The notes: a model not told the origin generated them from the letters alone. A stretch of DNA of 64,000 bases from Paraphysomonas bandaiensis (GCA_965644295.1 CBFFRP010000288.1:434001-498000); one strand, 5' to 3'. Positions 30,960 through 64,000 are shown, counted from the first letter of the stretch. Numbers and translations: made by a program.

Positions 30960-31495
30960 TAGCACACGGAAAGTGCTCACGAAGTTTTAAGGGCAATAGC
31001 ATGTTAAGGGCTGGATTTCATTTTCAAAGTTGAATATCTGACGATGCTGCTCTTCATGGTATGCAAGTGAGATAGATGATACTTGATACACAATGAAGTG
31101 ATAAAACAACCACACATGTTGATAGGCTGGTGGCGTTTAAGCCTCCAATATTTTGAGTAAAGTATGTGTATCATACATTGTTTTTCCATATCATGTATCT
31201 AAAACGCTGTGAAGAGTCCACGTATTGCATTTTATAACAATATACTAAAGGTTGTAGAAAACGTCTTCGTTGCTAAAATTTTAACCGGTGTATCAAGCAA
31301 AATGAAACTCACACATATTTCATGTTAAAAATCTGATTTACTTAAAACTTGTAGATGAAAATATTAAAAGCAAGGCTTAAAGCAGTAGAATAAACTTCAA
31401 GTAGTCCCAAAAAGGTTGTAATATCATATATTGCCTTCAAAGTGACAAACGCTAAAAATTGTTTCAAAATTGGGGAAAACGTCATTCCAATTAAT

Positions 31496-34400
31496 CTAAT
31501 CGAACGAGAGGATTTCGGTCCACGTCATAAATCGGAGCTCGTCCAATGGCTTCACTTGACCAGCAGCCTTTAGAACGTTGGAGACCTCAACACTCTGGAG
31601 GGAATCCATTCCTAATGTGGAAAGCATATCAGTGCTGCTGATCTTGGCGGGGTCCAAGCCAAGAACACGAGCAATACGCTGTGATGTGCTCAGAGTCTTA
31701 GCACCTGACTCTTCTCCTGAGCTATCTGATTTACTGCGAATATAACATGAGGCAACAGCATGGTCGGAGAAGAGAATAGTGTTGAGTGACTCCAAACAGC
31801 TGTCGATGTGCTGGGGGCTGAATCCAAGTGATGTATTTGTGGCTTGCTGCTTCATCAGAACACCAACAGTGCCAATGAATCCCCACTGAATGGCCACACC
31901 GGGCAATCCCACTGCTCTGCGGGCCATACACACTCCCTCCATAGCTGAGTTGGCATAGGCGTAGTTGGTCTGGCCCGGATTTCCAAACAAAGCTGAGACT
32001 GAGCTCCACATGACAAAGTTCTCAAGAGAAGGGCAGTGAGCCCTCGTGCTAGCGTCCAAGTTCTTACACATATCCGCTTTTACACGCACGGTCTCATTCC
32101 AGTCATTCTCAGACAGTTTGTCGAAGAGGCGGTCGTTGAGCACCATACCCAAATGCCAAACACCGACAAGGTTTTCACCGACACTGGAAATGAACTCTTC
32201 ACACTGCTGCGGGTCCCTCAAATCTGCATGAGTTACAGTAACCTCGCCAAGTGTCAACCTCTGGTGGGGCTTTGGGTCGCTGCGCGAGGCAATAATGATA
32301 CGTTCGGCACCTCGCGACTGAAGAAAGAGCACCAGCTCCATTCCAAACCCTCCCAGACCACCAACTACCAGATGCGTTCCTCGGGTGCGGAAAGTACGAG
32401 ACACTTTAGGTACAGCCTCAGAATCACTGCCAAAGATTTTCGACTGATCGACGCGAACGATAACCTTTCCGATGTGCTTACCAGTACTGACATATCTCAG
32501 CGCCTGCTCCGTATCTTCAAACACGGTTGAGCACAACGGCTTCACCTCACCGGACTTGAGACCCTCAATCATCAATTCTCTCACCGGTTGCCAGAGTTGA
32601 GGCTTGGAAAACATATCACTTAAGTCAAAACCATGAATGCTGACATTTCTCTCAAACACACCCATGCCAATACGCATATTTTGTTGGATGTCGTACTTGC
32701 CAATCTCACAGAAATGGCCGTATTGTGCCACACAGTCCAGACCAGCCTGCAGCTTATCTCCAGACAGAGAGTTGAGAACCGCATCTACACCTCTTCCCTC
32801 AGTAAGACATAACACATCGTCGCGGAACTTAACACTGTGGGAGTCCAGAATGCAACGCTTGTCAATGCCTAAGTTAGCATGAACCCATTCCATTTTGGCG
32901 TGAGAGCACGTAGCAATGACATTGACTCCACGGAACTTGCAGATGTGGAACGCAGCCTGGCCAACTCCACCAGCAATAGAGTGAATTAAAACAGTCTGAC
33001 CACGACGAATATTAGCCTTTACAACCAGGGCATAATACACGGTGGAGTACACAACAGGGATAGTGCACGCATCCTCTAGAGAAAGTGAGGCAGGGATGTC
33101 CCACAGCAGATGATCTGTTGTCTTGATGTGACTGGCCATACATCCAGATGCAATTCCCATAACTGGCTTTCCAGCAACAACACCGCTAAACTCAAGACCA
33201 ATCTTGACATCTTCATTGCTAGTGAGTTTTCCGTAAGATAACATGACATCCTTGAAGTTAATTCCACAGAACTTTACCTCACAGTCAGGCTCAACGTCAT
33301 TCTCAACCCAAGTGAGGGACTCCAAATCGCCAGGTTTGGTAACCTTGAGATGGTATCCGCGGTTTTTCACATCTGGCTTCTGACGCAAAGGAACCTGATG
33401 GAATCCCCCAGGGGTGCCATTACAGCGGATAGACATTGGTAATTCTGGAACAATATCAGATGACTGCGTGGAAATTACTGGTTGATGGCCCATCACTGAG
33501 GAAATATCAAGGTCCAGCTGAACAGAGGTGTAGCCAGGTTCCTTACGAAGGCTGCGCACCATTCCCAGGTATCCTACATCTGATGTCAAAACTGTTGAGG
33601 GTACACCGGAGGAAATTTCATTGTAGGTCTTCACAGTTGCTCTGGGGTCAGCAAGAACATCAGTCTCGGCCTTGCGTGCAAGAAGAACCAACATTGAGGA
33701 ACTCTTGTCCGTATACCAAATTACAGAACTGAATCCCGCGTCAGTGAGCATGTCCACCCACTTGTCTTGGCTCAACCACCGTCCATGGGGCCTCTCATCA
33801 TCTACAGAACTGCAATCAACAACACTACCCCAAAGCAGTTGCGGTAGAGCGCCAATGTACTCCCGCAGAACAAGAAATCCATCTTCAGTAAGTGCAGAGT
33901 GCATAGCAGACAAGTATGAGGAGATATCTGGTGTACTGTACAGAGCATTACTGGAGATTATTACATCAATGTTTTCAGCGGTGATAGCTACTGAGGAATT
34001 CTGATACGAATAAGAAAGCATCTCATGTTCAATCATAGGGGACATGACCTTGTAAAGCGCATCCACACCAGTACTGTCTCCTACATGAACAACTGAATAT
34101 GATCGGGAGAGATTCTCTCTGATTATTTGAGAAATGATGTCTAGCCCATCCGTGCACCATTGACAAGAGAGAATGGGGTCAGAGGAGTACAGTTGGTCGC
34201 TGTAGCGAGGAACTGTGGAGCTGCTGGTGCTCTTCAGCACGTCAGCATGAACAGACTCCACATACAAGCGAATACTCTTAGTCGGTACCACGTTCTCTAA
34301 GTCGTCGGTTACGCTCCCAGTGGAGTCTCTTGCAGAAAGACATTGCATCAGCTGCTGCTTGAACTGCTCTTCATGCTCGAGCACATGACCACCATATGGA

Positions 34401-37400
34401 ACAAACTCTACACCTCGAATAGTCGGCTGCTTGTGTACCTTGCGGGCCAAAGTCGTTTTTAATCCGCGGATGACAACGTCTTTATTTCCAAAGGAACGTA
34501 AGTCACGATTAGATAATAGAAGATGATCAGCGTCCTTCACATTCTTGCAGTTGATGGATACAGCACCAATAGCGGTAGGAAGAGATAATCCAGTCGGCCG
34601 GTTCAAAAAGGCCTGTAGTATGTTGTCCAAGTATACGATCCAGTGGCTCGCCTGACGTAGCTGAACCTTGGTGCCATCGAAAGATCTCTTCTCGATACTC
34701 TGGAAATGTTCACCATACTCGTAACCAAAGCGAGCAAGACGGGCATATACTGCATCGCGATCAATCCACACGCTGTCTTCAGTCGATGCAGACTCTGTGC
34801 GATCAATACTGTGAGAAGGAATTTGGTACTCTGAAGCGATGGACCCCTGAGAGACAAGCTTGTCATCATGGTGAATTTTCCAGCCTTTCTCATCTGTTGT
34901 CACAACAAGTGACACCGACACCCCGTCCAAGATAATAGCAGAGAATATTTTGACATCCACAAAGTGAATTTCATCAGTGCCGTATGCAGACCAGGCACTA
35001 TACACATGGGCAGTAGCTGGAAGCAGCGATCTACCATCAATAATATGATCCATCAAAAACGCATCCTTTCCGGCAAGGTCGAACTTAATGGTGATAGAGG
35101 AGTTCGCAGAGCTTCGGTCGAAGTCCTCGAAAGTGGGTATTCTCCAGTCGGTATCATGATCCCACTGAAGATTCACACGGTGCTTCATAGGGACCATATG
35201 GGTCACACGTGGAAAATTGAAATGAACACCATGCAACCACAAATTATCTACAAGAGTTCTCATTGTATCAACTCCACTGGTGCCACGACGCATGGTTTCC
35301 AAAATACAAACGTCGCCATCATCCACAGCAGCGCGACAACGCTTGATGACACTTTTTAACAGTGCATGGGGGCCGACTTCTACGATCACAGTTCCCACAG
35401 GTAGAGATCGAACAACTGGATCGAAATTGACTTGGCCAATGATGTTTCTGGTATGGTAGGCCGCATTGGCATATTTCTCACAGTCATGGTCAACTCCATT
35501 TCTGCATTCCACACAGCTAGACGAGAGCCACCTCTTCGTACGCTCCACTGGAGGGGTATCGGTAATCACAGAGGACAGAATATCTTCAATCTTATCAGCG
35601 TTGTCACGAAAGAACTTAGAGTGGTAGGCAATGCCGTCAGTGGGGACAGTCCTCGCGAAAATACCTTTCTCTTGCAAAGCAGAAGCAATCTCCGAAATTT
35701 CACTGTCACTTCCACTGAGAGTCACGCCATCAGGTGAATTGTGGCATGCTATAACTGTGTCGGAGTACGGCTTGATTAGTTCTACAGCAGAGTCGTAAGT
35801 TAGCCCCACAGCAAGCATAAGGCCAGTAGCTTTGATTTTGTCACTCAGCTGACATCTCATAAAAGCAATGCGTGCAGCTTCTTTCGCAGAGGTGCAGCCA
35901 TCAGCATATCCGCAGGCTACTTCTCCCACCGAATGACCAAATATGAAATCAGGTTCAACACCAGATTCCTTGAGCATTGCTGTTAATCCAAGCTGTACAA
36001 GAGTAATACCGAATCCAGACCACTGCTTATTCATCCACTTATCCCCGACAGTAAACAGATCATCAACGTTCACTGGAAGCTCACTGCAGGCCTCTGTGAT
36101 GGTAGAGCGAAAAGTAGTATTGCTGTTGTCTTGCCACAGCTCAGTAGCCATTCCCTTCCACTGACACCCTTGCCCAGTATAACAGAAAGCCACCAATGGC
36201 TTCGTCGCAGGAACACTCGAGGTCGTCAGTTCTTTTCCATCAGCAGAAACCACTCCTCTCCACGGAAACTTGTTGGTGGCAGTGCTGCTACGCATAAGTA
36301 CCTGCCAGGCGGCGAGGTTGAGGTTCCCAGAGCTGTGATAGGCTTGAAGTGCTCCCTCGCTGCGGCCAAATATAAATCTTGTAGTTGACACATCGTCAAC
36401 AACTGGTCGGCCACCACTGCAGACCACCATATGCGCATTGGTACCTCCAAATCCAAAGTTATTTATCGCAATTAGAGGTGGTTCGCCCGAAGTTGTAGCA
36501 GTTGGAAGAGGCTGAGTGAAGTTGGCAACTCGCAAACGATCACTGATGATGGGCTCATGCAGGGTAGTGCCTTGGTAATGCAGATTGGTTGGAACTGTAC
36601 CCTCACAAACGATGCCCAATACTTTGATAAGTGACATCATGCCAGAGGCTCCTTCCGCGTGACCCATGTTTGACTTGACACTTCCAATTAGAGTGTTTCC
36701 ACGGGTCTTCACTGTACCATAGGCAGTGTCGATGGCACGTAACTCTTGGCCATCTCCAGCAACTGTACCCGTTCCGTGGGCTTCCACGTACACAACTTTA
36801 GAGGGATCAATGTTGAACTCAGTACACACGCTTTGGCAGAGAGCGATTTGTTGGTTGGAGTCCGGGTAGGTAATACCCTTCGATTTGCAGCCATCCGAGT
36901 TGGATCCTGTGCCCAGAATGCGCATGATCCCTACATTAGAGCAAACTGACGGAGCCTCCAAGAGAACAGCTCCAACGCCATCAGCACGCACATAGCCATT
37001 GGCGCGATCATCGAACGAGTGGCACTTGCCATCAGGTGAGAGCATTCCGTACGAGGCAAAGCTCTTGAATACACCTATTAAATATAAACAATATGAGATG
37101 TATCATATGGCGCATTACATCTGCACATTACCTGGGTCAGTAGCAATGGATACACCAGCCACTATTGCTCGTGACACTTTGCCTGACATTACATCGCGTG
37201 CCGCGATGTCCATAGCAACTAGAGAGCTAGAGCAGGCGGTATCTATCGTAAGGGAGGGACCAGTGAAGTCAAAGCAGAAGGAGATACGGTTAGCGAACAT
37301 TGAGTGTGAGCAGCCAGTGTTCTCATAACCAGTAATTGTACGGACATCTTTTAATAAGGCCTTGTGCATGTCACTGAAGCATCCACCTACATATACTCCA

Positions 37401-37708
37401 GTACTAGACCGTGCGAGATCCTCCATAGTGTAGCCGGCGTCACTAATCGCCTCATATACAACTTCTAATAGAACACGGAGCTGAGGATCCAGGCACGAGG
37501 CCTGTGCAGAACTGATGCCAAAAAACATGGCATCAAACTTTTGTATAGTTCCTATCTGAGCCTGCCTTGAAGGGAGACCAGCATACCCTTCGGGATATCG
37601 CGATGAATTCTCAGTTACAAGATCAACCCCATCGCACAGATTGCTCCAAAAACTACCTATAGACTCACTTGACGGAAACCTCCCACTGAATCCTGTTATG
37701 TAAACCAT
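31496..37708 (-). CDS. Type I iterative FAS/PKS, animal-FASN-like, KS-AT-DH-pseudoMT-ER-KR-ACP, no TE; copy 1 (2051 aa, intron 37075-37131)
   Basis: KS DTACSSS, EAHGTGT, GSVKSNMGH, NNFGFGGTNAH; AT GHSVGE, AYHS; DH HIIDGRSLLP, LDNILQ; ER LIHSIAGGVGQAA, GKHIGKV; KR GGLGGFG, GQTNYAYAN; ACP GMDSL near the C-terminus. Confidence 0.95.
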
Positions 37709-38418
37709 GATGATTATTCAATTCACAATAGTGTTAAAAATGAATTATCCAAACCATCTTTCTGATCAGTGACGACTTTGAATTGGATATGAAGTCATCA
37801 CATCATCCTTTTAGCTGCCATACATTCCAGGTGACGGTAAAGCTGCCTTCCCGCTCGTCATGTAATCAGCATCGAGAATAAGTGATGTCTGTCCAATTCC
37901 AATTCTCGTAAGCAGAGTGGTGCGCTCTCATCGAATGGTTATGTGTGATTATCATTTAATTGGCTTACGTGACGATAGCTTGACTTTGGTTACCGTCACC
38001 TCTCATATCTAACTGTTGGTTGTGTGCCACAGCAGCACATACACACATACAGTGATTACTGTCGAATAGATTATGCTTGGGATAATATGATTGGTGAATT
38101 AGTTATACAGCAAAAGTTGGTATTGTTTCTCTGTATACTGTATTCGTTATACTGTATTTTTCGGTATTACATGTATTCCTTATTCACATATGCCATAGGA
38201 TTCCTACCTCATACTTCAGCGAATTGACGAATGAAAATATAGTATTCTACATTTATTGGATGAGGCGTATTGTAACTGCTGACGTGTTATGAAGTGATAT
38301 GATTGGACTGGAAAGATATCCATCTCTGCACATACATGCATCTCACTACACTGACAGATCTAGATCATAACTAGACAATGAGTACAATATCATTGAGTTG
38401 ACTTAACCAGTGTTAACA
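37709..38418. promoter_or_regulatory. Candidate bidirectional promoter shared by FAS/PKS copy 1 and the questin-oxidase-like gene
   Basis: 710-bp head-to-head interval; mirror of the TGACG/CCAAT cluster at 43407-43638, plus TGACGT at ~38280. Confidence 0.5.
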
Positions 38419-39755
38419 ATGTCATATTACGTTGCTCCTCCATTATCGCCATATTTATCGAACTGGCTTCCGATGTCGAGAAAATGGCACTTTATATTTG
38501 GCGGATTCCTTCACAATCATCTCGCGCATAACTTTGTTGTAATGGGATGCAGCGGTCTAGACGATGCTGAATCAAATGAGAAAATGAAGGTGTGGAAGCG
38601 TGTCGGTATAATACTCATTTATTCTTAATCAATTTTACGCAGTGGTGGAATGATTTTTATGAAAATAAAACTGAGAGTCTTACTGGAACTCCCCTTGAGA
38701 CTGCTCACCCGGTTACTCCCGATATGCCAGCTATTACTTCAGAAAGCTGGAAAGATCATATACGCATGGATAATTATGAACTATATCCGGCTTATTTGCA
38801 GTACTTTGATGAGCAGATATCTTCCCTCGGGAGAGAGACTGTCATTCAACAACATGTTCCATACTTACTTTATGGCATTGCTGGTTCAGCGCTACACCCT
38901 ATTATCCATTTGGGGTATGCACTTGACGCCCAGCATGATGGTATGACTGCTGAGGGTCTCGCGAGCTTATGCTGCGGTTTCATGTCATTGTCTTGTGCTC
39001 CTATGACTGAGAATCTCTGGACAGAAAATGAGGACTCCAAAGGTATTATCGACAGTGCAATTTCGTTTCTTTCCACTGCCAAAAACTGCAACTTTTATTC
39101 AATTGCCAAAGATGCCGGGAAGACAACTCGTTACATGGAGCAGCCTATCGGCTCCTTTCAGCGTAAGGTCTGGGCTTTCGATGACCCTTCCCTACCACTC
39201 GGTGCAGAACTTAACTCTATATGTCCTATACGGATGCCAATTGTCAATGAATCTATTACACCCTCTGTCAAAGAAGCGACAGCTCTAGCTGCAGCCGCCT
39301 ATGTTGCCTCTGATTGTGAATTCTTCACTCTGCATGGATTGACAAGTCTCCACGGGCTGCTAGCTACACTCCCTCTCCTTTCTCCACGACACCAAAGAAC
39401 TGCTATCATCCTGTGGTTACGAGCTACGCTAGCTACTATAGTAGTCGTGGATTGTCCAGGTTCTGAGAAACTCCTTGGAATTCTGCAGCGGTGGAAGGAA
39501 TCAGAGGAGACTGCCCCTGAACCCTCCGAGACGACTCCTGTGGAGGAAGCGTGGTGGAAAGATGCTATCACGAAGGCCCTCACAAGTACAGATGAACATG
39601 CTCCGAAAGCAGTATACGCGCTATGGAGGTGGTCAGTGTTCAACGATATGCCGGAGCATTCCCACGTTCTCTTCAGGGAGGCGGCGGTAAACCAGATTCG
39701 GCCTGTGGAAGGTGGGGGACCCGAGAAACTTATATGGGCCGACAGGAGCGAGTGA
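38419..39755 (+). CDS. Questin oxidase-like (AflY/HypA/GedK, DUF4243 family) oxidoreductase, 427 aa, 2 exons
   Basis: Exons 38419-38589 and 38643-39755 (phase 0). Family-like motifs GFLHNHLAH, YPAYLQYFDEQI, ALHPIIHLGYAL, AEGLA, FFTLHGLTSLH, DEHAPKAVYAL. Confidence 0.82.
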
Positions 39756-41154: not shown

Positions 41155-43202
41155 GTCTTAAACATAATTAAACCTCTAGTTTCAATTTTAATTTAGAGTT
41201 TGTAGTATCTGTCTGATAATCGCACTCATTATGTTGGCTCGTGAATAATATTCTTCACAGCTTGTCACTGCACAAAACACCACTGTAAAACAAATGCAAA
41301 ACAAAATGAGTTCTCCTTTTCTCTGTTAGAACCGCCTCTTTTGCCCGCTTTGTGTCAATATGCTTGTAAGAGTGTATGAAAATGTGTTTACCAAAAGCGC
41401 GCTAGTTACGTATTTGGGGAGTAACTTCATTTCTCCTCTCCCCAGCTGAGTAATCCCGTCTTTGAATACATTGAACACATAAGAATATCGACACTTTGTG
41501 TTACAGTATGTAACTTATGAAGGAACGTGTGATATGGCCTTACGCAACATGTTGGTGTATGTCGTTTTAGCTGGTAGCTAAGTCGTGTAGTGCAATGTAG
41601 CTATTGCAGCAGCACTACTATTAGAATATATTCTAATGCAACAGTGGTTGTACATTGGTGCTTGAAGAGTGTGCAAATTTTTTTCGTTGTATAAAATTTG
41701 ATAAGATTTAGCGTCTTCGAACTAGTTTACATTGCTGATATTTACATATTCACACATTATGTATGATATAACGTATTCTGTACATATCATGTTATGCATA
41801 TATATAGCAAAATGGTTGATCATGTGATATATTTAGAATTTATATAAGTGTACACATACTTTACAATAAAATGACATTTCATGCATATATTAATCAGACT
41901 TAACAATGAAGGGTAGTAGTAAATAATGGTAACATATATATCCTTGACTACATATTTTGTGATACCAGGGTATCTAGTACAGGAGGTTCATCAAGTCCAG
42001 AAAGTGTGTCTACAGCCCTGGCTTGCTTCTCAAGGGCTGCATCAATCACAAGTATAATCACATCCCTCTTGCTTGATCTTCTTAACTCTACACCAATAAG
42101 ATAGATTTAAGCTCTGCCTTGCGACCCCTGCTTAGGCTCCTCCGCCATAAAAACAATCAACATCAATAAATGTATCTACAACTACTGACTAGCTATAAGC
42201 AACTTACCAAGTCAAGAAATTGCATCTTATTGTTAATTGTTAGTACTTTTCTATCTGCGATTCTCTGGCCAAAGTAAATGACGTCCATTCACTTTCAATA
42301 CCAACATACCAGTCTCATCTAGTTGACTGATGTTAATTCGTCATCAAGTAAAAAGGATGATAAATTGTAGTTGCTGCAAAATACATCTAGTTCAAAAGCA
42401 ACATACATACAAATTCTCTTAACATCGAAAGTTAATGGAAGCTGGTGGGCTTTCGGTAGTGTGGTTGTTAATATAAACCACAGTATTCCTGTGGAGATAT
42501 GAGTATTCGATTGAGTCAACAACATGTTTTGAGACAAAATGGGGATAATTTATTATTCTATGACTTACGTATTCAATTCATGCGCATCTCATGAATGTGT
42601 ATCTGAAAAGCAGTGCACTGCCTTATGTTTTCCAACAAAGATACTTTTAGACCGGAAGGATAAGTCTGCTTCTTAAGGCAATAACTTGAAAAGGCATCCT
42701 CGACTCGAGAGTAGTTTGAAAACTAATATAATTTTACAATTTATCATGCGTTGTACTCCAGGCTCAAAAATATATATGAAAAGCGGAATTTGAATCTCCT
42801 TCATTGACGGTATGAAATCCCGTCACACCCTCATTCTGAAGTTTACACAACTCAGTATCGGTTAAATTTCCAACGACTAAAACAGTTCACTCTAACACAT
42901 ATCGAAGGTATATCAGATGCAAAATGCATTAGTTATTCGTGCTAATGTCGTCATAGCAATAAAACACTCATGATAAATACTCAATTCCACAACAACAATC
43001 GTGGCCCGTATACTAGAGCATCAAGAGATCCAACCAAGCAATGGAAACTGCAGAATAAAGGACGTAGCAAATATAGAAGGAGTACAACTTGGAAGCAGTG
43101 TAGTGGGAAGTAAGCCGAACACTTTCAGTGTGAGGGTATTCCTTATAGATTTAGGAACATTTTCAGCAACATTTAAATTTTGTTCCTGGCAAAGTCGGCA
43201 GC

Positions 43203-43699
43203 AGGAATCCTATGGCATATGTGAATAAGAAATACATGTAATACCGAAAAATACAGTATAACGAATACAGTATACAGAGAAACAATACCAACTTTTGCTG
43301 TATAACTAATTCACCAATCATATTATCCCAAGCATAATCTATTCGACAGTAATCACTGTATGTGTGTATGTGCTGCTGTGGCACACAACCAACAGTTAGA
43401 TATGAGAGGTGACGGTAACCAAAGTCAAGCTATCGTCACGTAAGCCAATTAAATGATAATCACACATAACCATTCGATGAGAGCGCACCACTCTGCTTAC
43501 GAGAATTGGAATTGGACAGACATCACTTATTCTCGATGCTGATTACATGACGAGCGGGAAGGCAGCTTTACCGTCACCTGGAATGTATGGCAGCTAAAAG
43601 GATGATGTGATGACTTCATATCCAATTCAAAGTCGTCACTGATCAGAAAGATGGTTTGGATAATTCATTTTTAACACTATTGTGAATTGAATAATCATC
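43203..43699 (+). promoter_or_regulatory. Duplicated upstream region of FAS/PKS copy 2 with TGACG x5 and CCAAT x4
   Basis: TGACG/CGTCA at 43410, 43434, 43548, 43572, 43634; CCAAT/ATTGG at 43445, 43505, 43511, 43622; 12-bp inverted pair AGGTGACGGTAA (43407) / TTACCGTCACCT (43568). Confidence 0.55.
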
Positions 43700-46600
43700 A
43701 TGGTTTACATAACAGGATTCAGTGGGAGGTTTCCGTCAAGTGAGTCTATAGGTAGTTTTTGGAGCAATCTGTGCGATGGGGTTGATCTTGTAACTGAGAA
43801 TTCATCGCGATATCCCGAAGGGTATGCTGGTCTCCCTTCAAGGCAGGCTCAGATAGGAACTATACAAAAGTTTGATGCCATGTTTTTTGGCATCAGTTCT
43901 GCACAGGCCTCGTGCCTGGATCCTCAGCTCCGTGTTCTATTAGAAGTTGTATATGAGGCGATTAGTGACGCCGGCTACACTATGGAGGATCTCGCACGGT
44001 CTAGTACTGGAGTATATGTAGGTGGATGCTTCAGTGACATGCACAAGGCCTTATTAAAAGATGTCCGTACAATTACTGGTTATGAGAACACTGGCTGCTC
44101 ACACTCAATGTTCGCTAACCGTATCTCCTTCTGCTTTGACTTCACTGGTCCCTCCCTTACGATAGATACCGCCTGCTCTAGCTCTCTAGTTGCTATGGAC
44201 ATCGCGGCACGCGATGTAATGTCAGGCAAAGTGTCACGAGCAATAGTGGCTGGTGTATCCATTGCTACTGACCCAGGTAATGTGCAGATGTAATGCGCCA
44301 TATGATACATCTCATATTGTTTATATTTAATAGGTGTATTCAAGAGCTTTGCCTCGTACGGAATGCTCTCACCTGATGGCAAGTGCCACTCGTTCGATGA
44401 TCGCGCCAATGGCTATGTGCGTGCTGATGGCGTTGGAGCTGTTCTCTTGGAGGCTCCGTCAGTTTGCTCTGATGTAGGGATCATGCGCATTCTGGGCACA
44501 GGATCCAACTCGGATGGCTGCAAATCGAAGGGTATTACCTACCCGGACTCCAACCAACAAATCGCTCTCTGCCAAAGCGTGTGCACTGAGTTCAACATTG
44601 ATCCCTCTAAAGTTGTGTACGTGGAAGCCCACGGAACGGGTACAGTTGCTGGAGATGGCCAAGAGTTACGTGCCATCGACACTGCCTATGGTACAGTGAA
44701 GACCCGTGGAAACACTCTAATTGGAAGTGTCAAGTCAAACATGGGTCACGCGGAAGGAGCCTCTGGCATGATGTCACTTATCAAAGTATTGGGCATCGTT
44801 TGTGAGGGTACAGTTCCAACCAATCTGCATTACCAAGGCACTACCCTGCATGAGCCCATCATCAGTGATCGTTTGCGAGTTGCCAACTTCACTCAGCCTC
44901 TTCCAACTGCTACAACTTCGGGCGAACCACCTCTAATTGCGATAAATAACTTTGGGTTTGGAGGTACCAATGCGCATATGGTGGTCTGCAGTGGTGGCCG
45001 ACCAGTTGTTGACGATGTGTCAACTACAAGATTTATATTTGGCCGCAGCGAGGGAGCACTTCAAGCCTATCACAGCTCTGGGAACCTCAACCTCGCCGCC
45101 TGGCAGGTACTTATGCGTAGCAGCACTGCCACCAACAAGTTTCCGTGGAGAGGAGTGGTTTCTGCTGATGGAAAAGAACTGACGACCTCGAGTGTTCCTG
45201 CGACGAAGCCATTGGTGGCTTTCTGTTATACTGGGCAAGGGTGTCAGTGGAAGGGAATGGCTACTGAGCTGTGGCAAGACAACAGCAATACTACTTTTCG
45301 CTCTACCATCACAGAGGCCTGCAGTGAGCTTCCAGTGAACGTTGATGATCTGTTTACTCTCGGGGATAAGTGGATGAATAAGCAGTGGTCTGGATTCGGT
45401 ATTACTCTTGTACAGCTTGGATTAACAGCAATGCTCAAGGAATCTGGTGTTGAACCTGATTTCATATTTGGTCATTCGGTGGGAGAAGTAGCCTGCGGAT
45501 ATGCTGATGGCTGCACCTCTGCGAAAGAAGCTGCACGCATTGCTTTTATGAGATGTCAGCTGAGTGACAAAATCAAAGCTACTGGCCTTATGCTTGCTGT
45601 GGGGCTAACTTACGACTCTGCTGTAGAACTAATCAAGCCGTACTCCGACACAGTTATAGCATGCCACAATTCACCTGATGGCGTGACTCTCAGTGGAAGT
45701 GACAGTGAAATTTCGGAGATTGCTTCTGCTTTGCAAGAGAAAGGTATTTTCGCGAGGACTGTCCCCACTGACGGCATTGCCTACCACTCTAAGTTCTTTC
45801 GTGACAACGCTGATAAGATTGAAGATATTCTGTCCTCTGTGATTATCGATACCCCTCCAGTGGAGCGTACGAAGAGGTGGCTCTCGTCTAGCTGTGTGGA
45901 ATGCAGAAATGGAGTTGACCATGACTGTGAGAAATATGCCAATGCGGCCTACCATACCAGAAACATCATTGGCCAAGTCAATTTCGATCCAGTTGTTCGA
46001 TCTCTACCTGTGGGAACTGTGATCGTAGAAGTCGGCCCCCATGCACTGTTAAAAAGTGTCATCAAGCGTTGTCGCGCTGCTGTGGATGATGGCGACGTTT
46101 GTATTTTGGAAACCATGCGTCGTGGCACCAGTGGAGTTGATACAATGAGAACTCTTGTAGATAATTTGTGGTTGCATGGTGTTCATTTCAATTTTCCACG
46201 TGTGACCCATATGGTCCCTATGAAGCACCGTGTGAATCTTCAGTGGGATCATGATACCGACTGGAGAATACCCACTTTCGAGGACTTCGACCGAAGCTCT
46301 GCGAACTCCTCTATCACCATTAAGTTCGACCTTGCCGGAAAGGATGCGTTTTTGATGGATCATATTATTGATGGTAGATCGCTGCTTCCAGCTACTGCCC
46401 ATGTGTATAGTGCCTGGTCTGCATACGGCACTGATGAAATTCACTTTGTGGATGTCAAAATATTCTCTGCTATTATCTTGGACGGGGTGTCGGTGTCACT
46501 TGTTGTGACAACAGATGAGAAAGGCTGGAAAATTCACCATGATGACAAGCTTGTCTCTCAGGGGTCCATCGCTTCAGAGTACCAAATTCCTTCTCACAGT

Positions 46601-49600
46601 ATTGATCGCACAGAGTCTGCATCGACTGAAGACAGCGTGTGGATTGATCGCGATGCAGTATATGCCCGTCTTGCTCGCTTTGGTTACGAGTATGGTGAAC
46701 ATTTCCAGAGTATCGAGAAGAGATCTTTCGATGGCACCAAGGTTCAGCTACGTCAGGCGAGCCACTGGATCGTATACTTGGACAACATACTACAGGCCTT
46801 TTTGAACCGGCCGACTGGATTATCTCTTCCCACCGCTATTGGTGCTGTATCCATCAACTGCAAGAATGTGAAGGACGCTGATCATCTTCTAATATCTAAT
46901 CGTGACTTACGTTCCTTTGGAAATAAAGACGTTGTCATCCGCGGATTAAAAACGACTTTGGCCCGCAAGGTACACAAGCAGCCGACTATTCGAGGTGTAG
47001 AGTTCGTTCCATATGGTGGTCATGTGCTCGAGCATGAAGAGCAGTTCAAGCAGCAGCTGATGCAATGTCTTTCTGCAAGAGACTCCACTGGGAGCGTAAC
47101 CGACGACTTAGAGAACGTGGTACCGACTAAGAGTATTCGCTTGTATGTGGAGTCTGTTCATGCTGACGTGCTGAAGAGCACCAGCAGCTCCACAGTTCCT
47201 CGCTACAGCGACCAACTGTACTCCTCTGACCCCATTCTCTCTTGTCAATGGTGCACGGATGGGCTAGACATCATTTCTCAAATAATCAGAGAGAATCTCT
47301 CCCGATCATATTCAGTTGTTCATGTAGGAGACAGTACTGGTGTGGATGCGCTTTACAAGGTCATGTCCCCTATGATTGAACATGAGATGCTTTCTTATTC
47401 GTATCAGAATTCCTCAGTAGCTATCACCGCTGAAAACATTGATGTAATAATCTCCAGTAATGCTCTGTACAGTACACCAGATATCTCCTCATACTTGTCT
47501 GCTATGCACTCTGCACTTACTGAAGATGGATTTCTTGTTCTGCGGGAGTACATTGGCGCTCTACCGCAACTGCTCTGGGGTAGTGTTGTTGATTGCAGTT
47601 CTGTAGATGATGAGAGGCCCCATGGACGGTGGTTGAGCCAAGACAAGTGGGTGGACATGCTCACTGACGCGGGATTCAGTTCTGTAATTTGGTATACGGA
47701 CAAGAGTTCCTCAATGTTGGTTCTTCTTGCACGCAAGGCCGAGACTGATGTTCTTGCTGACCCCAGAGCAACTGTGAAGACCTACAATGAAATTTCCTCC
47801 GGTGTACCCTCAACAGTTTTGACATCAGATGTAGGATACCTGGGAATGGTGCGCAGCCTTCGTAAGGAACCTGGCTACACCTCTGTTCAGCTGGACCTTG
47901 ATATTTCCTCTGTGATGGGCCATCAACCAGTAATTTCCACGCAGTCATCTGATATTGTTCCAGAATTACCAATGTCTATCCGCTGTAATGGCACCCCTGG
48001 GGGATTCCATCAGGTTCCTTTGCGTCAGAAGCCAGATGTGAAAAACCGCGGATACCATCTCAAGGTTACCAAACCTGGCGATTTGGAGTCCCTCACTTGG
48101 GTTGAGAATGACGTTGAGCCTGACTGTGAGGTAAAGTTCTGTGGAATTAACTTCAAGGATGTCATGTTATCTTACGGAAAACTCACTAGCAATGAAGATG
48201 TCAAGATTGGTCTTGAGTTTAGCGGTGTTGTTGCTGGAAAGCCAGTTATGGGAATTGCATCTGGATGTATGGCCAGTCACATCAAGACAACAGATCATCT
48301 GCTGTGGGACATCCCTGCCTCACTTTCTCTAGAGGATGCGTGCACTATCCCTGTTGTGTACTCCACCGTGTATTATGCCCTGGTTGTAAAGGCTAATATT
48401 CGTCGTGGTCAGACTGTTTTAATTCACTCTATTGCTGGTGGAGTTGGCCAGGCTGCGTTCCACATCTGCAAGTTCCGTGGAGTCAATGTCATTGCTACGT
48501 GCTCTCACGCCAAAATGGAATGGGTTCATGCTAACTTAGGCATTGACAAGCGTTGCATTCTGGACTCCCACAGTGTTAAGTTCCGCGACGATGTGTTATG
48601 TCTTACTGAGGGAAGAGGTGTAGATGCGGTTCTCAACTCTCTGTCTGGAGATAAGCTGCAGGCTGGTCTGGACTGTGTGGCACAATACGGCCATTTCTGT
48701 GAGATTGGCAAGTACGATATCCAACAAAATATGCGCATTGGCATGGGTGTGTTTGAGAGAAATGTCAGCATTCATGGTTTTGACTTAAGTGATATGTTTT
48801 CCAAGCCTCAACTCTGGCAACCGGTGAGAGAATTGATGATTGAGGGTCTCAAGTCCGGTGAGGTGAAGCCGTTGTGCTCAACCGTGTTTGAAGATACGGA
48901 GCAGGCGCTGAGATATGTCAGTACTGGTAAGCATATCGGAAAGGTTATCGTTCGCGTTGATCAGTCGAAAATCTTTGGCAGAGATTCTGAGGCTGTACCT
49001 AAAGTGTCTCGTACTTTCCGCACCCGAGGAACGCATCTGGTAGTTGGTGGTCTGGGAGGGTTTGGAATGGAGCTGGTGCTCTTTCTTCAGTCACGAGGTG
49101 CCGAACGTATCATTATTGCCTCGCGCAGCGACCCAAAGCCCCACCAGAGGTTGACACTTGGCGAGGTTACTGTAACTCATGCAGATTTGAGGGACCCGCA
49201 GCAGTGTGAAGAGTTCATTTCCAGTGTCGGTGAAAACCTTGTCGGTGTTTGGCATTTGGGTATGGTGCTCAACGACCGCCTCTTCGACAAACTGTCTGAG
49301 AATGACTGGAATGAGACCGTGCGTGTAAAAGCGGATATGTGTAAGAACTTGGACGCTAGCACGAGGGCTCACTGCCCTTCTCTTGAGAACTTTGTCATGT
49401 GGAGCTCAGTCTCAGCTTTGTTTGGAAATCCGGGCCAGACCAACTACGCCTATGCCAACTCAGCTATGGAGGGAGTGTGTATGGCCCGCAGAGCAGTGGG
49501 ATTGCCCGGTGTGGCCATTCAGTGGGGATTCATTGGCACTGTTGGTGTTCTGATGAAGCAGCAAGCCACAAATACATCACTTGGATTCAGCCCCCAGCAC

Positions 49601-49912
49601 ATCGACAGCTGTTTGGAGTCACTCAACACTATTCTCTTCTCCGACCATGCTGTTGCCTCATGTTATATTCGCAGTAAATCAGATAGCTCAGGAGAAGAGT
49701 CAGGTGCTAAGACTCTGAGCACATCACAGCGTATTGCTCGTGTTCTTGGCTTGGACCCCGCCAAGATCAGCAGCACTGATATGCTTTCCACATTAGGAAT
49801 GGATTCCCTCCAGAGTGTTGAGGTCTCCAACGTTCTAAAGGCTGCTGGTCAAGTGAAGCCATTGGACGAGCTCCGATTTATGACGTGGACCGAAATCCTC
49901 TCGTTCGATTAG
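43700..49912 (+). CDS. Type I iterative FAS/PKS, animal-FASN-like, no TE; copy 2 (2051 aa, intron 44277-44333)
   Basis: Same motifs as copy 1. Exon 1 (577 nt) + exon 2 (5579 nt) join in frame (..TDPG VFKSFASYGMLSPDG..). Five amino-acid differences from copy 1 seen (N/D, V/L, T/I, L/I, S/R). Confidence 0.95.
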
Positions 49913-50233
49913 ATTAATTGGAATGACGTTTTCCCCAATTTTGAAACAATTTTTAGCGTTTGTCACTTTGAAGGCAATATATGATATTACAACCTTTTTG
50001 GATCTATGAAGTTTATTCTACTGCTTTAAGCCTTGCTTTTAATATTCAACTACAAGTTATATGAGTAAATCAGATTTTTACAAATTTTTGCTTATTTTGA
50101 ACTAAACATTACAGGAAGGAAATTGAATGAAATATATATTGCATGATGTAGGGATTAAATTTTAGCAACGAAGACGGTTTTCTACAATCTATACTAAATT
50201 ATTACAACACTTTTACACTGAAGCGTAACCTAG

Positions 50234-50359
50234 GATTAGAACTGCCCGCTGAAGACAAGTAATCGGGCTGAGTTCACCTTAAGTACTCAAAAATCCTGAA
50301 GTCAGCAGATGTCAGGTATATCAGCATTATACTTGCTCATTGTGTTTGCATTGAGTGAT
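50234..50359 (-). repeat. Dispersed repeat family, copy D (core 50297-50321)
   Basis: ATCCTGAAGTCAGCAGATGTCAGGTATAT with diverged flanks homologous to copies B and C. Confidence 0.88.
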
Positions 50360-51099
50360 TCATGTATAAAAGTCTTAGCAATAAGCGTCAAGAATCTGCA
50401 ATAGATAAGTAGCTAGATAAAGTGATTGATGCCGAATGTGTGTTCACATTATTCGACATCTGTGAGGGCTGTGGCCGAGAGGTAATGCGTTAAAGTTTCC
50501 ACATGGATACAATGTGATTAAACCTGTTATGATTGCCTAATTTTGGTTTCTCCTGATGGCCCATGTCATTGAGATTATAACAAGGCTTTGGCACTGCACT
50601 GTTCTCCAAGCTGTTCTTCAAGCATTGTCAAGTACATATGTTTTATCTTGCTTTCTAGAGGTGGTCATCGGAGCGGAGGTATACGGTTTCATACTAGAAT
50701 AAGTCACTCGGGAGAAGAGTGAAAGATAAATGCATATGTTGGACGAGTGCACACACAATGGAGGGAAGACATTGGAGTTCGCTTGAATTTTGGTAGATGT
50801 ATGTTTCATGCGTCAGGGTACAAAACTGCACAAGTGAGATCGCTTCGTGACTGTGAGAGGACTCGTCGATAGAGTATTTTTATAAATCAAACCTTATAAA
50901 ACAATTTTAGTAAAGCTTTCAATCTGTCATCTGCGTTTTCTGAAAAAGTGTGCCCTCTAATCTTTTACTTGATTTACCAAGTTTACATATATATATAACT
51001 TGGCCAATTTATCTAAAATATTAATTACGTTTCATCAAATTACTTATTTATTTTATCTTGATCTCTGCACCCTTCGCTACCAGCTCACACTCGAGACAT

Positions 51100-51550
51100 G
51101 AATTCACCGTCGAAATTGACTCCATATGGACACTGTCCAGATTCCCTTCTGGCTACTAGACAGACAACAGCACACAACTATTTCTCAAACTAGACTGTAC
51201 ACAGTCGCGCAACAACTGACCACTCTTATGAGGGCCTCGGGAAATGAAAAAGACAAATGCAATGGGTATGCCGCACTAGAGCCAAAACGAAACTTGGGCT
51301 TTTGACCCTAATAATTTTGCTTGCTCGGACTGCGGCAACCCCCTCAATTCCATCAACCACATGTGCCTCAACTGACCTCATCCACAGATGACTCAAATAT
51401 GTAAATCCGCATTATTCCAACATCACAAAAAATCTATTCATGCCCTGTGACGAGATACAACTGCCACACAGTGTGAGAGACGATAATCCTACAATCTCTC
51501 TCACAAGACATCAACCTCAATCCTTAGGAGCCCTGTCCCATACATAAAGT
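51100..51550 (+). pseudogene. Degenerate non-LTR retrotransposon (LINE) ORF2 C-terminal fragment
   Basis: 51322-51375 reads CSDCGNPLNSINHMCLN*, a Cx2Cx8Hx4C zinc knuckle with the last Cys replaced by TGA. C/A-rich strand; limits approximate. Confidence 0.5.
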
Positions 51551-51698
51551 CTGATTATTCAGAAATTGGCATGTTAATGTTAAAACGAAACAAGAAATCT
51601 ATCTTTAGTACTTAATACTAATATCCTACTATTTGACGCTACGGAGGCTGCTTGTGCGTCGCCGCAAGCACCAAAGTTCGACCACCTCCGCTCTCTAT

Positions 51699-52158
51699 GT
51701 CCTTAACATGAACTAGCTTGGATGCTTAACTGCAGCAGGTAGCCGAATACCCCGGATGCCCTTGAAGAAATCTACACAAGTGACACTAATTAGTGTCCCT
51801 TGGAACCACATAAGCATTTATTTGACTATGAGTGGGCAGACGTGTGCGGCTCACGTTAGTTTCCCGGAGAAATGTCACTGGTACTTATCCCCCTGAAAAC
51901 CACGAAAAGGTGCGAGTCCGACTTTGTTGAGGGTATACATATAATGTATGTCTTATTATAGTTGTAGAGGCCTTTATCTTGAAGATACTAAATTAAAACA
52001 AACCTAATAGCTACTACGTCGCGATCCGCCATGTTTAGAAGAGGGTCGGAGTTGGTGTGTTGGAGTGGAGAGGATTCCCCTCAACGAAGCCAAACTCGCA
52101 CCTTTTCGTGGTGTTCTGGGGGATAAGTACCAGTGATATTTCTCCGAGAAATAACATG
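51699..52158. repeat. Dispersed repeat family copies E (51699-51933, +) and F (52078-52158, -), tail-to-tail
   Basis: Both share GGTACTTATCCCCC..A.CACGAAAAGGTGCGAG...TTGAGGG with copy B and stop at the same position. Confidence 0.88.
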
Positions 52159-53002
52159 GAGAGTAAGAGGAAGAAAAGAGAAAGACGTATAAAAATTTCT
52201 ATATTTTTGTTCATCGTCGCTATGCGTGAGTCACCTATCAGGCTTGTGTAACAATTAATTGGTTTAAAAAATGATAACTGCCATTAATCATTAATTGACT
52301 GGCATAATTATATAGCATCTTAACCTGTATTGATATCATACCAATCATACTAGGTACAACCCCATTGTTTGTTAGCATAAAATAATTTGAACGTATATGT
52401 AGTCACTTTATCATTATTAACCATAATTATGCGACAGTATAATGGGCAGTATATACTTTAACCCAAAACAATACTTTTCGACCTATTATTGATTTACCAA
52501 TGGTCTTATAACCTGAGAATAGTGTTTTTGAATAAACATACACAAGAATTATTATTATTATTATTTCAAATTGTATGTAATATATATTGATGTATGGGTT
52601 AAGTAATCCGTTGGTAATTTAAGTTTAATAGAGCAGCACATATTAGAAGCAGTCGTGTATGTTATAATCAGTGTAAAAGTACAGCTGTGAGGTAAATTAA
52701 TGAAATTTAACAGTAAAGTACTTCCAGAGATACCTATATTATCAACTCATAACGTGTTTTACAGTTGTCTTGTACCCAGGGTACAGAATAACAAAGTCCA
52801 TGATAACGATTATTCACGTTTCAGCGAACTGCTTTAAGGTGAGTCACGTTTTCATCGACAGCCGAAAAATTCAGCATGTGCATATTTTAAACAAATCGGA
52901 CAGAACAAAAAATTACAGCATACATTGAAACAAGTCCTAAAATTCATACACCACTCCAACTTTCTTGACAATGAAGCAGACTCCATATTTTCTAGTCGAA
53001 AT

Positions 53003-63600: not shown

Positions 63601-64000
63601 GGCTGTCCAGTTGGCTCACAAGATGGAGCTGATGAAGGAGAAGAAGGTACAGAAGATGGGATTGATGTCGGCCCTGATGACGGAAGACCGGATGGCTCTC
63701 CTGATGGAACCGTGGTGGGAATTCTTGAGGGTACTGCAGAGGGTTGACCACTTGGTTGCCCACTCGGTAGTCCAGATGGAAGCCCCGAAGGATCACAGGA
63801 TGGAATCCCTGTTGGTATTGTTGAAGGAACGATACTTGGAGTTGATGAAGGATAGCTAGATGGCAAAGAAGATGGATCTCCAGATGGCTCCCCGCTAGGT
63901 TTAGTGGACGGATAGCTTGTAGGTTGACCAGTGGGCTCTGTAGAAGGCAAACTACTAGGGATTCCTGTGGGTAGTCCTGTTGGGTGGCCAGAAGGTTGTC
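60675..64000 (-). CDS. Mucin-like type I membrane protein (5' end outside window)
   Basis: PTGQ/PSSQ tetrapeptide repeats with a 501-bp higher-order duplication; membrane-proximal domain with GRRRLG; [20 protein letters not shown]; Ser-rich cytoplasmic tail. Confidence 0.88.

What the first reader, a model, noticed from the sequence alone, without database searches (positions are those of the whole stretch)
43700..49912. Synthase resembles metazoan FASN motif-for-motif but is shorter, lacks a thioesterase and has a dead methyltransferase
Seen: WDHDTDW after the AT, DHIIDGRSLLPATA, FGYEYGEHFQSI, IPVVYSTVYYALVV, GVDAVLNSL..DKLQA, EIGKYD, GKHIGKVIV, GGLGGFGMEL, ANSAMEGVC..RR..GLPGVAIQWG. From memory these track animal FASN more closely than fungal HR-PKS or bacterial modular PKS. 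The MT region keeps DVIISSNAL..L..M...L..DGFLVL, but the SAM motif is degenerate (VVHVGDSTG). The ORF stops about 30 aa after the ACP serine. Inference: this is either a deep non-animal branch of the FASN/animal-FAS-like PKS lineage or a horizontal acquisition, and it needs a trans-acting release step.
Basis: partly seen in the sequence, partly recalled or inferred. Interest (0 to 1): 0.72.

Follow-up and report, generated by a model that had tools for sequence, protein, structure and literature searches.

The report
Chrysophyte cytosolic type I fatty-acid synthase
This is a real, expressed, two-copy gene for an animal-FAS-like megasynthase in the colourless marine flagellate Paraphysomonas. 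It is most likely the cell's own fatty-acid synthase, replacing the lost plastid pathway, and a 2024 preprint already reports such a synthase for this group of protists.

Summary
A two-exon gene (43700-44276, 44334-49912; about 2051 aa) encodes KS-AT-DH-pseudoMT-ER-KR-ACP and ends 35 residues after the ACP serine. Every catalytic motif is intact except the SAM motif of the methyltransferase. Spliced transcript contigs end 40-130 nt after the stop, so no thioesterase exon is spliced on.

A perfect 6815-nt inverted repeat carries a second identical copy (31496-37708, minus strand).

Among solved structures pig and human FAS are the best matches. In trees, however, the protein sits in a thioesterase-less clade of environmental, mostly unnamed sequences, some of them eukaryotic. 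Animal FAS groups with a bacterial clade instead, and a window-plus-animal clade is rejected (AU p = 2e-78).

The genome is Paraphysomonas, a colourless chrysophyte. It has no FabA/FabZ, no FatA/B thioesterase, no light-harvesting genes and no other FAS-like gene. Terpis et al. (bioRxiv 10.1101/2024.02.03.578753) already describe a type I FAS, acquired by gene transfer, in Picophagus, Leukarachnion and chrysophytes that stands in for the missing type II FAS.

Verdict: a new member of a known kind. The conserved lack of a thioesterase, the methyltransferase decay parallel to that in animals, and the palindromic duplication are added details. The release step is unknown.

The parts
43192..50006 (+). 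Right arm of a perfect inverted repeat. It holds the whole transcription unit of copy B, from 508 nt upstream of the ATG to 94 nt past the stop.
   Evidence: the repeat finder: arms 31402-38216 and 43192-50006, 6815 nt, 100% complementary, 4975 nt apart.
43700..44276 (+). Exon 1 of copy B: start codon and the N-terminal part of KS, including the active-site Cys (DTACSSS).
   Evidence: Translation. PF00109 4.7e-50 over residues 2-195. In-frame stop just upstream.
44277..44333 (+). 57-nt GT..AG intron, phase 1.
   Evidence: Sequence. Spliced out in contigs of runs X6, X7 and X15 (joint 44274>44332, skips 57, GT..AG).
44334..44833 (+). Start of exon 2: C-terminal half of KS, with both catalytic His (EAHGTGT, KSNMGH).
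   Evidence: PF00109 and PF02801 5.2e-32. Motif alignment.
45221..46183 (+). Acyltransferase domain: GHSVGE, with AYHS at the specificity position.
   Evidence: PF00698 6.4e-47. Motifs.
46328..46810 (+). Dehydratase core: HxxxGxxxxP with the His codon at 46361-46363, and DxxxQ with the Asp codon at 46781-46783.
   Evidence: PF21089 weak hit. Both motifs are conserved across the family.
47033..48055 (+). Pseudo-methyltransferase plus pseudo-KR region. The degenerate SAM motif I (VVHVGDSTG) starts at 47315.
   Evidence: PF13489 22.7 bits, below the cut-off of 27. Motif I is decayed here but intact in deeper relatives. AlphaFold model pLDDT 85.2. Best PDB matches are the human FASN psiME-psiKR region and EcPKS1/2, then the CurJ C-methyltransferase.
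48143..48952 (+). Enoylreductase: INFKD (LNF[KR]D in relatives), GGVGQAA, EIGK.
   Evidence: PF00107 and PF13602. Motifs.
49028..49534 (+). Ketoreductase: GGLGGFG plus the catalytic K, S, Y and N.
   Evidence: PF08659 1e-37. Motifs.
49730..49912 (+). ACP (LGMDSLQ, Ser codon 49805-49807), a 35-residue tail and the TAG stop (49910-49912). No thioesterase follows.
   Evidence: PF00550. The tail is 35 residues in the window and in nearly all clade relatives. Transcript contigs end at 49954-50043.
31496..37708 (-). Copy A, the identical second gene: exon 1 37708-37132, intron 37131-37075, exon 2 37074-31496.
   Evidence: ORFs of identical length (197 and 1849 aa) on the minus strand. 100% identical arm.
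38410..39755 (+). Questin-oxidase-like gene in the 4975-nt spacer between the two copies. It is a neighbour; a functional link is not shown.
   Evidence: PF14027 1.9e-30 on ORF 38592-39755. A second family member sits elsewhere in the genome, on C176. It is absent next to homologues P0002, P0006 and P0012.

Best explanation
The two identical genes encode a cytosolic, iterative, fully reducing type I synthase (KS-AT-DH-pseudoMT-ER-KR-ACP). It most likely serves as the de novo fatty-acid synthase of Paraphysomonas, a colourless chrysophyte that has lost the plastid type II FAS.

Inferred mechanism, by analogy with animal FAS: the AT loads acetyl and malonyl units onto the ACP, KS condenses them, and KR, DH and ER reduce each beta-keto group fully. 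The methyltransferase fold is kept only as a scaffold, so the chains are unbranched.

The protein ends right after the ACP, so the saturated acyl chain must leave by another route. Candidates are a discrete thioesterase (a type II thioesterase-like gene on contig C424) or direct acyl transfer. This step is inferred and not shown.

The gene belongs to a TE-less, non-animal clade of the FAS-like family. It is neither derived from nor sister to animal FASN.
For: - Gene model and expression: spliced contigs of 6.2-6.3 kb cover the gene through its 3' end. They end 42-63 nt past the stop. PolyA metatranscriptome contigs end at 50021 and 50043.
- All catalytic motifs of KS, AT, DH, ER, KR and ACP are intact, and MT motif I is decayed.
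- The pseudoMT region folds like the FASN psiME-psiKR region.
- There is no N-terminal extension before the KS.
- Organism: a neighbouring KIF9 ORF is 100% identical to an MMETSP1103 Paraphysomonas transcript.
- The genome has no FabA/FabZ, no FatA/B thioesterase and no LHC genes.
- The only other KS genes are giant modular PKSs, a PKS-NRPS hybrid, an ER-less module fragment and three stand-alone KS-type hits, of which two were scanned (KAS-like) and one (C298) was not examined.
- Kohli et al. 2016 found no type II FAS genes in Paraphysomonas (PMC5029157).
- Terpis et al. report a type I FAS in Picophagus, Leukarachnion and chrysophytes that explains the missing FAS II. A 2026 preprint repeats this.
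- The absence of a TE is conserved: a 35-residue tail after the ACP serine across the clade.
Against: - No biochemical data exist, and the product is unknown.
- No release enzyme is identified. The C424 thioesterase could equally serve the genome's PKS or NRPS genes.
- Deeper members of the same clade keep an intact methyltransferase motif and may be methyl-branching PKSs, so a FAS role is not a given for the family.
- Absence of FabZ rests on a six-frame HMM search of one assembly.
- I could not place named Picophagus or chrysophyte FAS I sequences in my tree, so identity with the published clade is inferred from organism and architecture.
Confidence: 0.65

Rival explanations
1. It is a specialised-lipid polyketide synthase, not the housekeeping FAS. 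It would make, for example, very long, hydroxylated or otherwise modified alkyl chains that are released or tailored by dedicated partners, perhaps including the neighbouring questin-oxidase-like enzyme. Fatty acids would then come from bacterial prey.
For: - There is no thioesterase, as in animal FAS-like PKSs, whose off-loading is mostly unknown (PMC10764717).
- Clade relatives have an intact methyltransferase.
- A questin-oxidase-family gene sits between the two copies.
- Kohli et al. allow that heterotrophic chrysophytes take fatty acids from their diet.
- In Nannochloropsis, FAS-like type I enzymes have been discussed as PKSs for long-chain diols (title and abstract only).
Against: - A full reducing loop plus a dead methyltransferase gives plain saturated chains.
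- The questin-oxidase neighbour is not conserved next to homologues, and a second copy lies elsewhere in the genome.
- Questin oxidases act on aromatic polyketides, which this enzyme cannot make (established knowledge).
- No other de novo FAS was found in the genome.
Confidence: 0.27
2. It is a direct offshoot of the animal FASN/AFPK lineage: either a deep sister branch or a gene transferred from an animal.
For: The best solved-structure matches are pig and human FAS (840 and 824 bits) and then the sea-slug AFPKs. Animal FASN proteins align over the full length at 30-31% identity.
Against: - In FastTree and IQ-TREE trees the window clade groups with another TE-less clade of environmental sequences and a bacterial clade.
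- Animals group with a different bacterial clade that includes a gene on a complete Thermodesulfobacteriota chromosome.
- The KS-AT and ER-KR partitions agree.
- The AU test rejects window clade + animals (p = 2e-78) and window + sister clade + animals (p = 4e-10).
Confidence: 0.04
3. The second copy, or the whole palindrome, is an assembly artefact, or the gene is a contaminant.
For: 100% identity over 6815 nt is unusual for old duplicates. I could not lay DNA reads on both arm boundaries.
Against: - The repeat lies inside a long contig (window at 434-498 kb of C288), with a unique 4975-nt spacer that carries a gene and with unique outer flanks.
- The gene has a spliceosomal intron.
- About 20 runs from 13 studies hold it.
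- Transcript contigs cross the outer arm boundary at 50006.
Confidence: 0.04

Closest known systems
[quoted passage not shown]
   Same: Both are large multidomain type I FAS homologues in the Chrysophyceae-related ochrophytes. Both occur where plastid type II FAS is missing, and the published one is proposed to be horizontally acquired. The window's organism is a colourless chrysophyte without FabZ.
   Different: I could not align their named sequences, so membership of the same clade is inferred. In the text I could read, the paper does not mention the missing thioesterase, the decayed methyltransferase motif, the palindromic two-copy locus or the closer bacterial relatives of animal FAS.
Metazoan fatty acid synthase (FASN; pig 2VZ8, human 8VF7)
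   Same: Same domain order KS-AT-DH-pseudoMT-pseudoKR-ER-KR-ACP. Same catalytic motifs and an inactive methyltransferase fold. It is the best match among solved structures.
   Different: The window protein has no C-terminal thioesterase and is about 450 residues shorter. Identity is only about 30%. It lies in a different clade, and monophyly with animals is rejected. The methyltransferase decay arose independently.
Animal FAS-like polyketide synthases (AFPK; EcPKS1/EcPKS2 of Elysia)
   Same: Both are thioesterase-less, iterative and FAS-like, with an unknown off-loading step (PMC10764717). They are the second-best structural matches, at 642 and 586 bits.
   Different: AFPKs form a clade with animal FAS and occur in molluscs and arthropods. 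The window protein is outside that clade and scores lower against AFPKs than against FASN.
Bacterial single-module FAS-like PKSs (for example on Thermodesulfobacteriota chromosome OZ244197.1, and in Caldilineaceae and Rhodothermales MAGs)
   Same: Same KS-AT-DH-MT-ER-KR-ACP single-module layout, 27-33% identity over the full length, mostly TE-less.
   Different: The ones I checked keep an intact SAM motif. They are uninterrupted bacterial ORFs, whereas the window gene has an intron and eukaryotic neighbours.
Nannochloropsis/Microchloropsis cytosolic type I FAS-like enzyme
   Same: A heterokont 'type I FAS similar to FAS from animals' of unclear role, present alongside or instead of type II FAS (PMC3499364; PMC13235166).
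   Different: It was not in my trees, so its relationship is untested. Terpis et al. state that FAS I is absent from other ochrophytes, so it may be a different lineage.

Membership tests
Metazoan FASN | Domain order KS-MAT-DH-pseudoME-pseudoKR-ER-KR-ACP with intact catalytic residues | tested here: met
   Pfam, motif alignments, fold of the pseudoMT region.
Metazoan FASN | C-terminal thioesterase domain | tested here: not met
   No PF00975 hit. The stop comes 35 residues after the ACP serine. Transcripts end just after the stop. There is no TE-like tblastn hit anywhere in the window.
Metazoan FASN | Falls in the animal FAS clade | tested here: not met
   Trees. The AU test rejects it, p = 2e-78.
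Animal FAS-like PKS (AFPK) | Forms a clade with animal FAS and is encoded in animal genomes | tested here: not met
   The organism is Paraphysomonas. The window clade is separate from the animal rows, which include TE-less ones. True Elysia AFPKs were compared only through PDB scores.
Ochrophyte FAS I (Terpis et al.) | Multidomain type I FAS homologue encoded in a chrysophyte, Picophagus or synchromophyte nuclear genome | tested here: met
   Spliceosomal intron and eukaryotic neighbours. A neighbouring gene is 100% identical to a Paraphysomonas MMETSP1103 transcript.
Ochrophyte FAS I (Terpis et al.) | Co-occurs with absence of plastid type II FAS in colourless members | tested here: met
   No PF07977 (FabA/FabZ), no PF01643 and no PF00504 in the genome. 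Kohli 2016 found no type II FAS genes in Paraphysomonas. FabI, FabD and FabG were not searched.
Ochrophyte FAS I (Terpis et al.) | Groups with the published Picophagus/Leukarachnion/chrysophyte sequences in a KS tree | not testable with these tools
The nearest relatives (P0001-P0006, 43-63% identity) are unnamed metagenome or Logan proteins, and the only named chrysophyte (Epipyxis, P0019) is in the sister clade.
Fungal HR-PKS / bacterial modular type I PKS | Closest similarity and grouping with LovB-type or DEBS-type synthases | tested here: not met
   LovB 229 bits and DEBS 232 bits, against pig FAS 840 bits. Actinomycete modules are the most distant rows in the trees. No fungal HR-PKS was in the tree.
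Functional C-methyltransferase-containing PKS | Intact SAM-binding motif I (ExGxGxGG) | tested here: not met
   The window has HVGDSTG. Relatives P0005, P0006, P0011, P0012, the Epipyxis clade and the bacteria keep the motif. The Pfam MT hit is below its cut-off.

The most novel reading that the evidence does not exclude
Chrysophytes made their own polyketide-to-fatty-acid transition, in parallel with animals. A horizontally acquired, methyl-branching, TE-less iterative PKS lost its methyltransferase activity in the Paraphysomonas lineage and became the sole de novo FAS after plastid FAS II was lost. It would release its product by a route unlike either animal FAS (cis thioesterase) or fungal FAS (MPT transfer), for example through a discrete type II thioesterase or direct transfer to CoA or lipid. 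The perfect palindromic duplication would be a dosage adaptation kept uniform by gene conversion.
Probability: 0.3. Interest if true: 0.55.

Novelty: new member of a known kind. Interest (0 to 1): 0.33.

Why it matters
It shows at the genomic level what the 'FAS I' of colourless chrysophytes looks like. It is an expressed, intron-bearing, duplicated gene with every reductive domain intact, no thioesterase and a dead methyltransferase.

This supports the idea that a cytosolic type I synthase allowed these protists to drop plastid fatty-acid synthesis.

It also corrects the impression that similarity to animal FASN means kinship with animals. The FAS-like family spans bacteria and environmental eukaryotes, and animals and chrysophytes sit on different branches. 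Methyltransferase decay apparently happened twice.

The open question of practical interest is how a TE-less FAS releases its product.

Tried and rejected
- A downstream thioesterase exon. No ORF of note lies in 49913-53529. No TE-like tblastn hit occurs in the window. Transcript contigs end at 49954-50043. Rejected.
- A FAS paralogue with a TE elsewhere in the genome. The C619 gene with a TE is a PKS-NRPS hybrid (ACP-KS-AT-ACP-C-TE-A...), and C544 is a KS-AT-DH-KR-ACP module fragment. Rejected.
- A conserved biosynthetic cluster with the questin-oxidase gene. It is not found beside homologues P0002, P0006 or P0012. Unsupported.
- A giant-virus origin. A scan of IMG/VR found no relative. The contexts of sister-clade proteins P0029 and P0033 look virus-like but were not proven.
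- The protein-atlas look-up gave only generic PKS clusters without taxa.
- Exact look-up of the window ORF in public assemblies returned nothing.
- A site-heterogeneous 'careful' tree (C20/PMSF) and a UFBoot run did not finish within the machine's limits. I fell back on IQ-TREE -fast under LG+F+G4 with SH-aLRT and AU tests.


Full report
**What is there.** The finding's range holds one gene in two exons. Exon 1 (43700-44276) starts with Met-Val-Tyr-Ile-Thr-Gly, which matches the KS profile from its fourth position. It carries the active-site cysteine (DTACSSS), and an in-frame TGA lies 12 nt upstream of the ATG. A 57-nt GT..AG intron (44277-44333) follows. Exon 2 runs from 44334 to the TAG at 49910-49912. 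The spliced product is about 2051 aa.

All searches, alignments, trees and the fold used the exon-2 product (1858 aa, window:44336-49909) or exon 1 alone. The first 193 residues, which hold the KS N-terminal half, are therefore not in the trees.

**Expression and the 3' end.** About 20 public runs from 13 studies hold the stretch, including polyA marine metatranscriptomes. Contigs of runs X6, X7 and X15 lack exactly the 57-nt intron, so they are transcripts. The X6 (6322 nt) and X7 (6183 nt) contigs cover the laid stretch through to their 3' ends at 49975 and 49954. They also run on beyond its first letter, to about 100 nt upstream of the ATG if colinear. Metatranscriptome contigs end at 50021 and 50043.

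No joint leads to a further exon. No ORF of note lies in the next 3.6 kb. Animal TE domains find nothing in the window by tblastn (best E = 0.6).

**Domains and residues.** Pfam gives KS, AT, a weak DH, a sub-threshold Methyltransf_23, ER, KR and PP-binding. In a 55-row alignment the following motifs are all present:
- KS histidines
- AT GHSVGE
- DH HxxxGxxxxP and DxxxQ
- ER INFKD (LNF[KR]D in relatives), GGVGQAA and EIGK
- KR GGLGGFG with K, S, Y and N
- ACP DSL

**The methyltransferase.** SAM motif I, ExGxGxGG, is intact in several groups:
- deeper members of the window's clade (P0005, P0006, P0011, P0012)
- the Epipyxis clade
- the bacterial relatives examined

It is decayed in the window (HVGDSTG) and its closest relatives (P0001-P0004), and the region is missing in P0009. 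It is also decayed, independently, in animal FASN.

An AlphaFold model of exon-2 residues 900-1240 has mean pLDDT 85.2 and pTM 0.86. Its best PDB matches are the human FASN pseudoME-pseudoKR region and the EcPKS1/2 modifying regions, followed by true C-methyltransferases such as CurJ and the citrinin CMeT.

**No thioesterase is the rule in this clade.** The tail after the ACP serine is 35 residues in the window and in P0002, P0003, P0005, P0006, P0011, P0012 and Epipyxis P0019. It is 38 in P0001 and 30 in P0029, against 328-358 in animal FASN. In the precomputed Pfam lists, PF00975 appears only in rows that the trees place in the animal clade, never in a window-clade, sister-clade or bacterial row.

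**Relatives.** Among solved structures the bit scores rank as follows:

| Structure | Bits |
|---|---|
| Pig FAS | 840 |
| Human FAS | 824 |
| EcPKS1 (AFPK) | 642 |
| EcPKS2 (AFPK) | 586 |
| Mycocerosic acid synthase | 393 |
| Dictyostelium PKS16 | 251 |
| DEBS | 232 |
| LovB | 229 |

The impression of 'animal FASN rather than fungal or modular PKS' is therefore correct as a statement of similarity.

The closest database proteins are unnamed environmental sequences at 43-63% identity (P0001-P0006, P0009). Animal FASN aligns at about 30%. P0006 sits among eukaryotic genes such as Ku70/80 and eIF4E.

A scan of bacterial genomes found full-length single-ORF relatives at 27-33% identity. One lies on a complete Thermodesulfobacteriota chromosome.

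**Trees.** FastTree on 131 rows and IQ-TREE on 55 rows by 1727 columns (LG+F+G4, fast search, SH-aLRT) agree on these groupings:
- The window clade (10 rows) is sister to a 16-row TE-less clade that contains Epipyxis (support 98.5).
- That pair is sister to a bacterial group of four (support 100).
- Animal FAS, including TE-less animal rows, is sister to another bacterial clade of eight (support 99.6).

The KS-AT and ER-KR partitions give the same main groups. AU tests reject a clade of the window clade plus animals (p = 2e-78). They also reject the window clade, its sister clade and animals together (p = 4e-10).

These analyses have limits:
- The model was site-homogeneous and the searches were fast.
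- No Elysia AFPK, fungal HR-PKS, Dictyostelium or Nannochloropsis sequence was in the tree.
- The 'bacterial' labels of short MAG contigs may be wrong.

**Organism and metabolic context.** A KIF9 kinesin ORF in the same window (1946-4027, minus strand) is 100% identical to a transcript of MMETSP1103, taxon 36769. That taxon is the genus Paraphysomonas, class Chrysophyceae. The next named hits are Mallomonas and Ochromonas.

The 62.6-Mb genome lacks several gene families:
- no light-harvesting protein genes
- no FabA/FabZ
- no FatA/B acyl-ACP thioesterase

Its KS-bearing genes are the following:
- the two copies described here
- giant modular PKSs on contig C80
- a PKS-NRPS hybrid on C619
- an ER-less module fragment on C544
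- three stand-alone KS-type hits; the two I scanned look like KAS, and the third (C298) was not examined

Phosphopantetheinyl transferases are present. The window's pair is therefore the only FAS-like fully reducing synthase found.

**Literature.** Three sources bear directly on the finding.
- Kohli et al. 2016 found no type II FAS genes in heterotrophic chrysophytes, including Paraphysomonas. They suggested dietary uptake or a different FAS pathway (PMC5029157).
- Terpis et al. report a type I FAS in Picophagus that forms a clade with homologues from Leukarachnion and from photosynthetic and colourless chrysophytes. They propose horizontal acquisition, and they note that it explains the missing type II FAS in colourless chrysophytes (10.1101/2024.02.03.578753). 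A 2026 preprint repeats this.
- Lin et al. 2024 define AFPKs as a clade with animal FAS. They found no animal FAS in choanoflagellates (PMC10764717).

The present gene is best read as the Paraphysomonas member of the ochrophyte FAS I. I could not test clade identity with named sequences.

**Mechanism.** The following are shown:
- an expressed gene
- an intact condensing and fully reducing domain set
- no active methyltransferase motif
- no thioesterase
- no N-terminal targeting extension
- no alternative FAS found in the genome

The following is inferred: cytosolic, iterative synthesis of straight saturated acyl chains from acetyl- and malonyl-CoA, as in animal FAS. The AYHS motif at the AT specificity position resembles the AFHS of animal FAS rather than the ASHS of the methylmalonyl-type module in the alignment.

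Release of the product is unknown. A multi-exon type II thioesterase-like gene on C424, with GHSFG and GSHF motifs, is a candidate, but it could serve the other megasynthases instead.

**Locus architecture.** The whole transcription unit is duplicated as a perfect inverted repeat (31402-38216 and 43192-50006, 100% over 6815 nt). The two copies lie head to head around a unique 4975-nt spacer. The spacer carries a questin-oxidase-family gene.

That neighbour is not conserved next to three homologues, and it has a paralogue elsewhere in the genome. I therefore do not treat the locus as a biosynthetic cluster.

The identity of the arms suggests recent duplication or gene conversion.

**Verdict.** The gene is ordinary in the sense that the family has been reported for this group of protists. 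The conserved lack of a thioesterase, the parallel methyltransferase decay and the palindromic duplication are modest additions.

Noticed in passing
G000 contig C80:195000-296000 (loci L011-L028): A cluster of giant modular PKS genes with open frames of 7292, 7347 and 12609 aa, holding at least 17 KS domains. This is an unusually large polyketide machinery for a colourless bacterivorous flagellate.
   Followed up: no
G000 contig C619:5200-18500 (L040, L042): A PKS-NRPS hybrid (ACP-KS-AT-ACP-C-TE-A...C-A) with an internal thioesterase, followed by a separate TE-like ORF. A near-identical TE-like ORF lies on C367.
   Followed up: partly
L051 (OZ244197.1, Thermodesulfobacteriota chromosome) and L043, L044, L047-L049: A clade of bacterial single-module FAS-like synthases is closer to animal FASN than any protist sequence in my trees (SH-aLRT 99.6). 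This bears on the origin of animal FAS, if the MAG assignments hold.
   Followed up: partly
L066 (P0029, GCA_013565615.1 contig) and the contig of P0033: Sister-clade synthases sit among densely packed small ORFs without Pfam hits, plus Peptidase_C48, thioredoxin, HNH and three Laminin_G_3 genes. GC is 35% in the one contig with DNA (L066). The context looks like a giant virus, but no hallmark gene was seen and IMG/VR gave no relative.
   Followed up: partly
window 38410-39755 (+): A questin-oxidase-family (PF14027) gene, probably with a short upstream exon, lies in the spacer of the palindrome. One paralogue lies on C176. This family is mostly known from fungal aromatic-polyketide clusters.
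   Followed up: partly
window 50006: Exactly at the outer end of the repeat arm, an environmental polyA metatranscriptome contig (X16) carries a 2-nt CT insertion. Strain contigs differ from the window at only 1-5 positions over the gene.
   Followed up: no
window 1946-4027 (-): MMETSP1103 holds two KIF9 variants, one 100% and one 89% identical to the window ORF. The transcriptome may contain two Paraphysomonas genotypes, or the gene has a diverged paralogue or allele.
   Followed up: no
window 60675-63950 (-): A 1091-aa open frame made largely of PT (Pro-Thr) disordered repeats (PF04886, 7 stretches), in a local GC-rich, strongly GC-skewed region.
   Followed up: no
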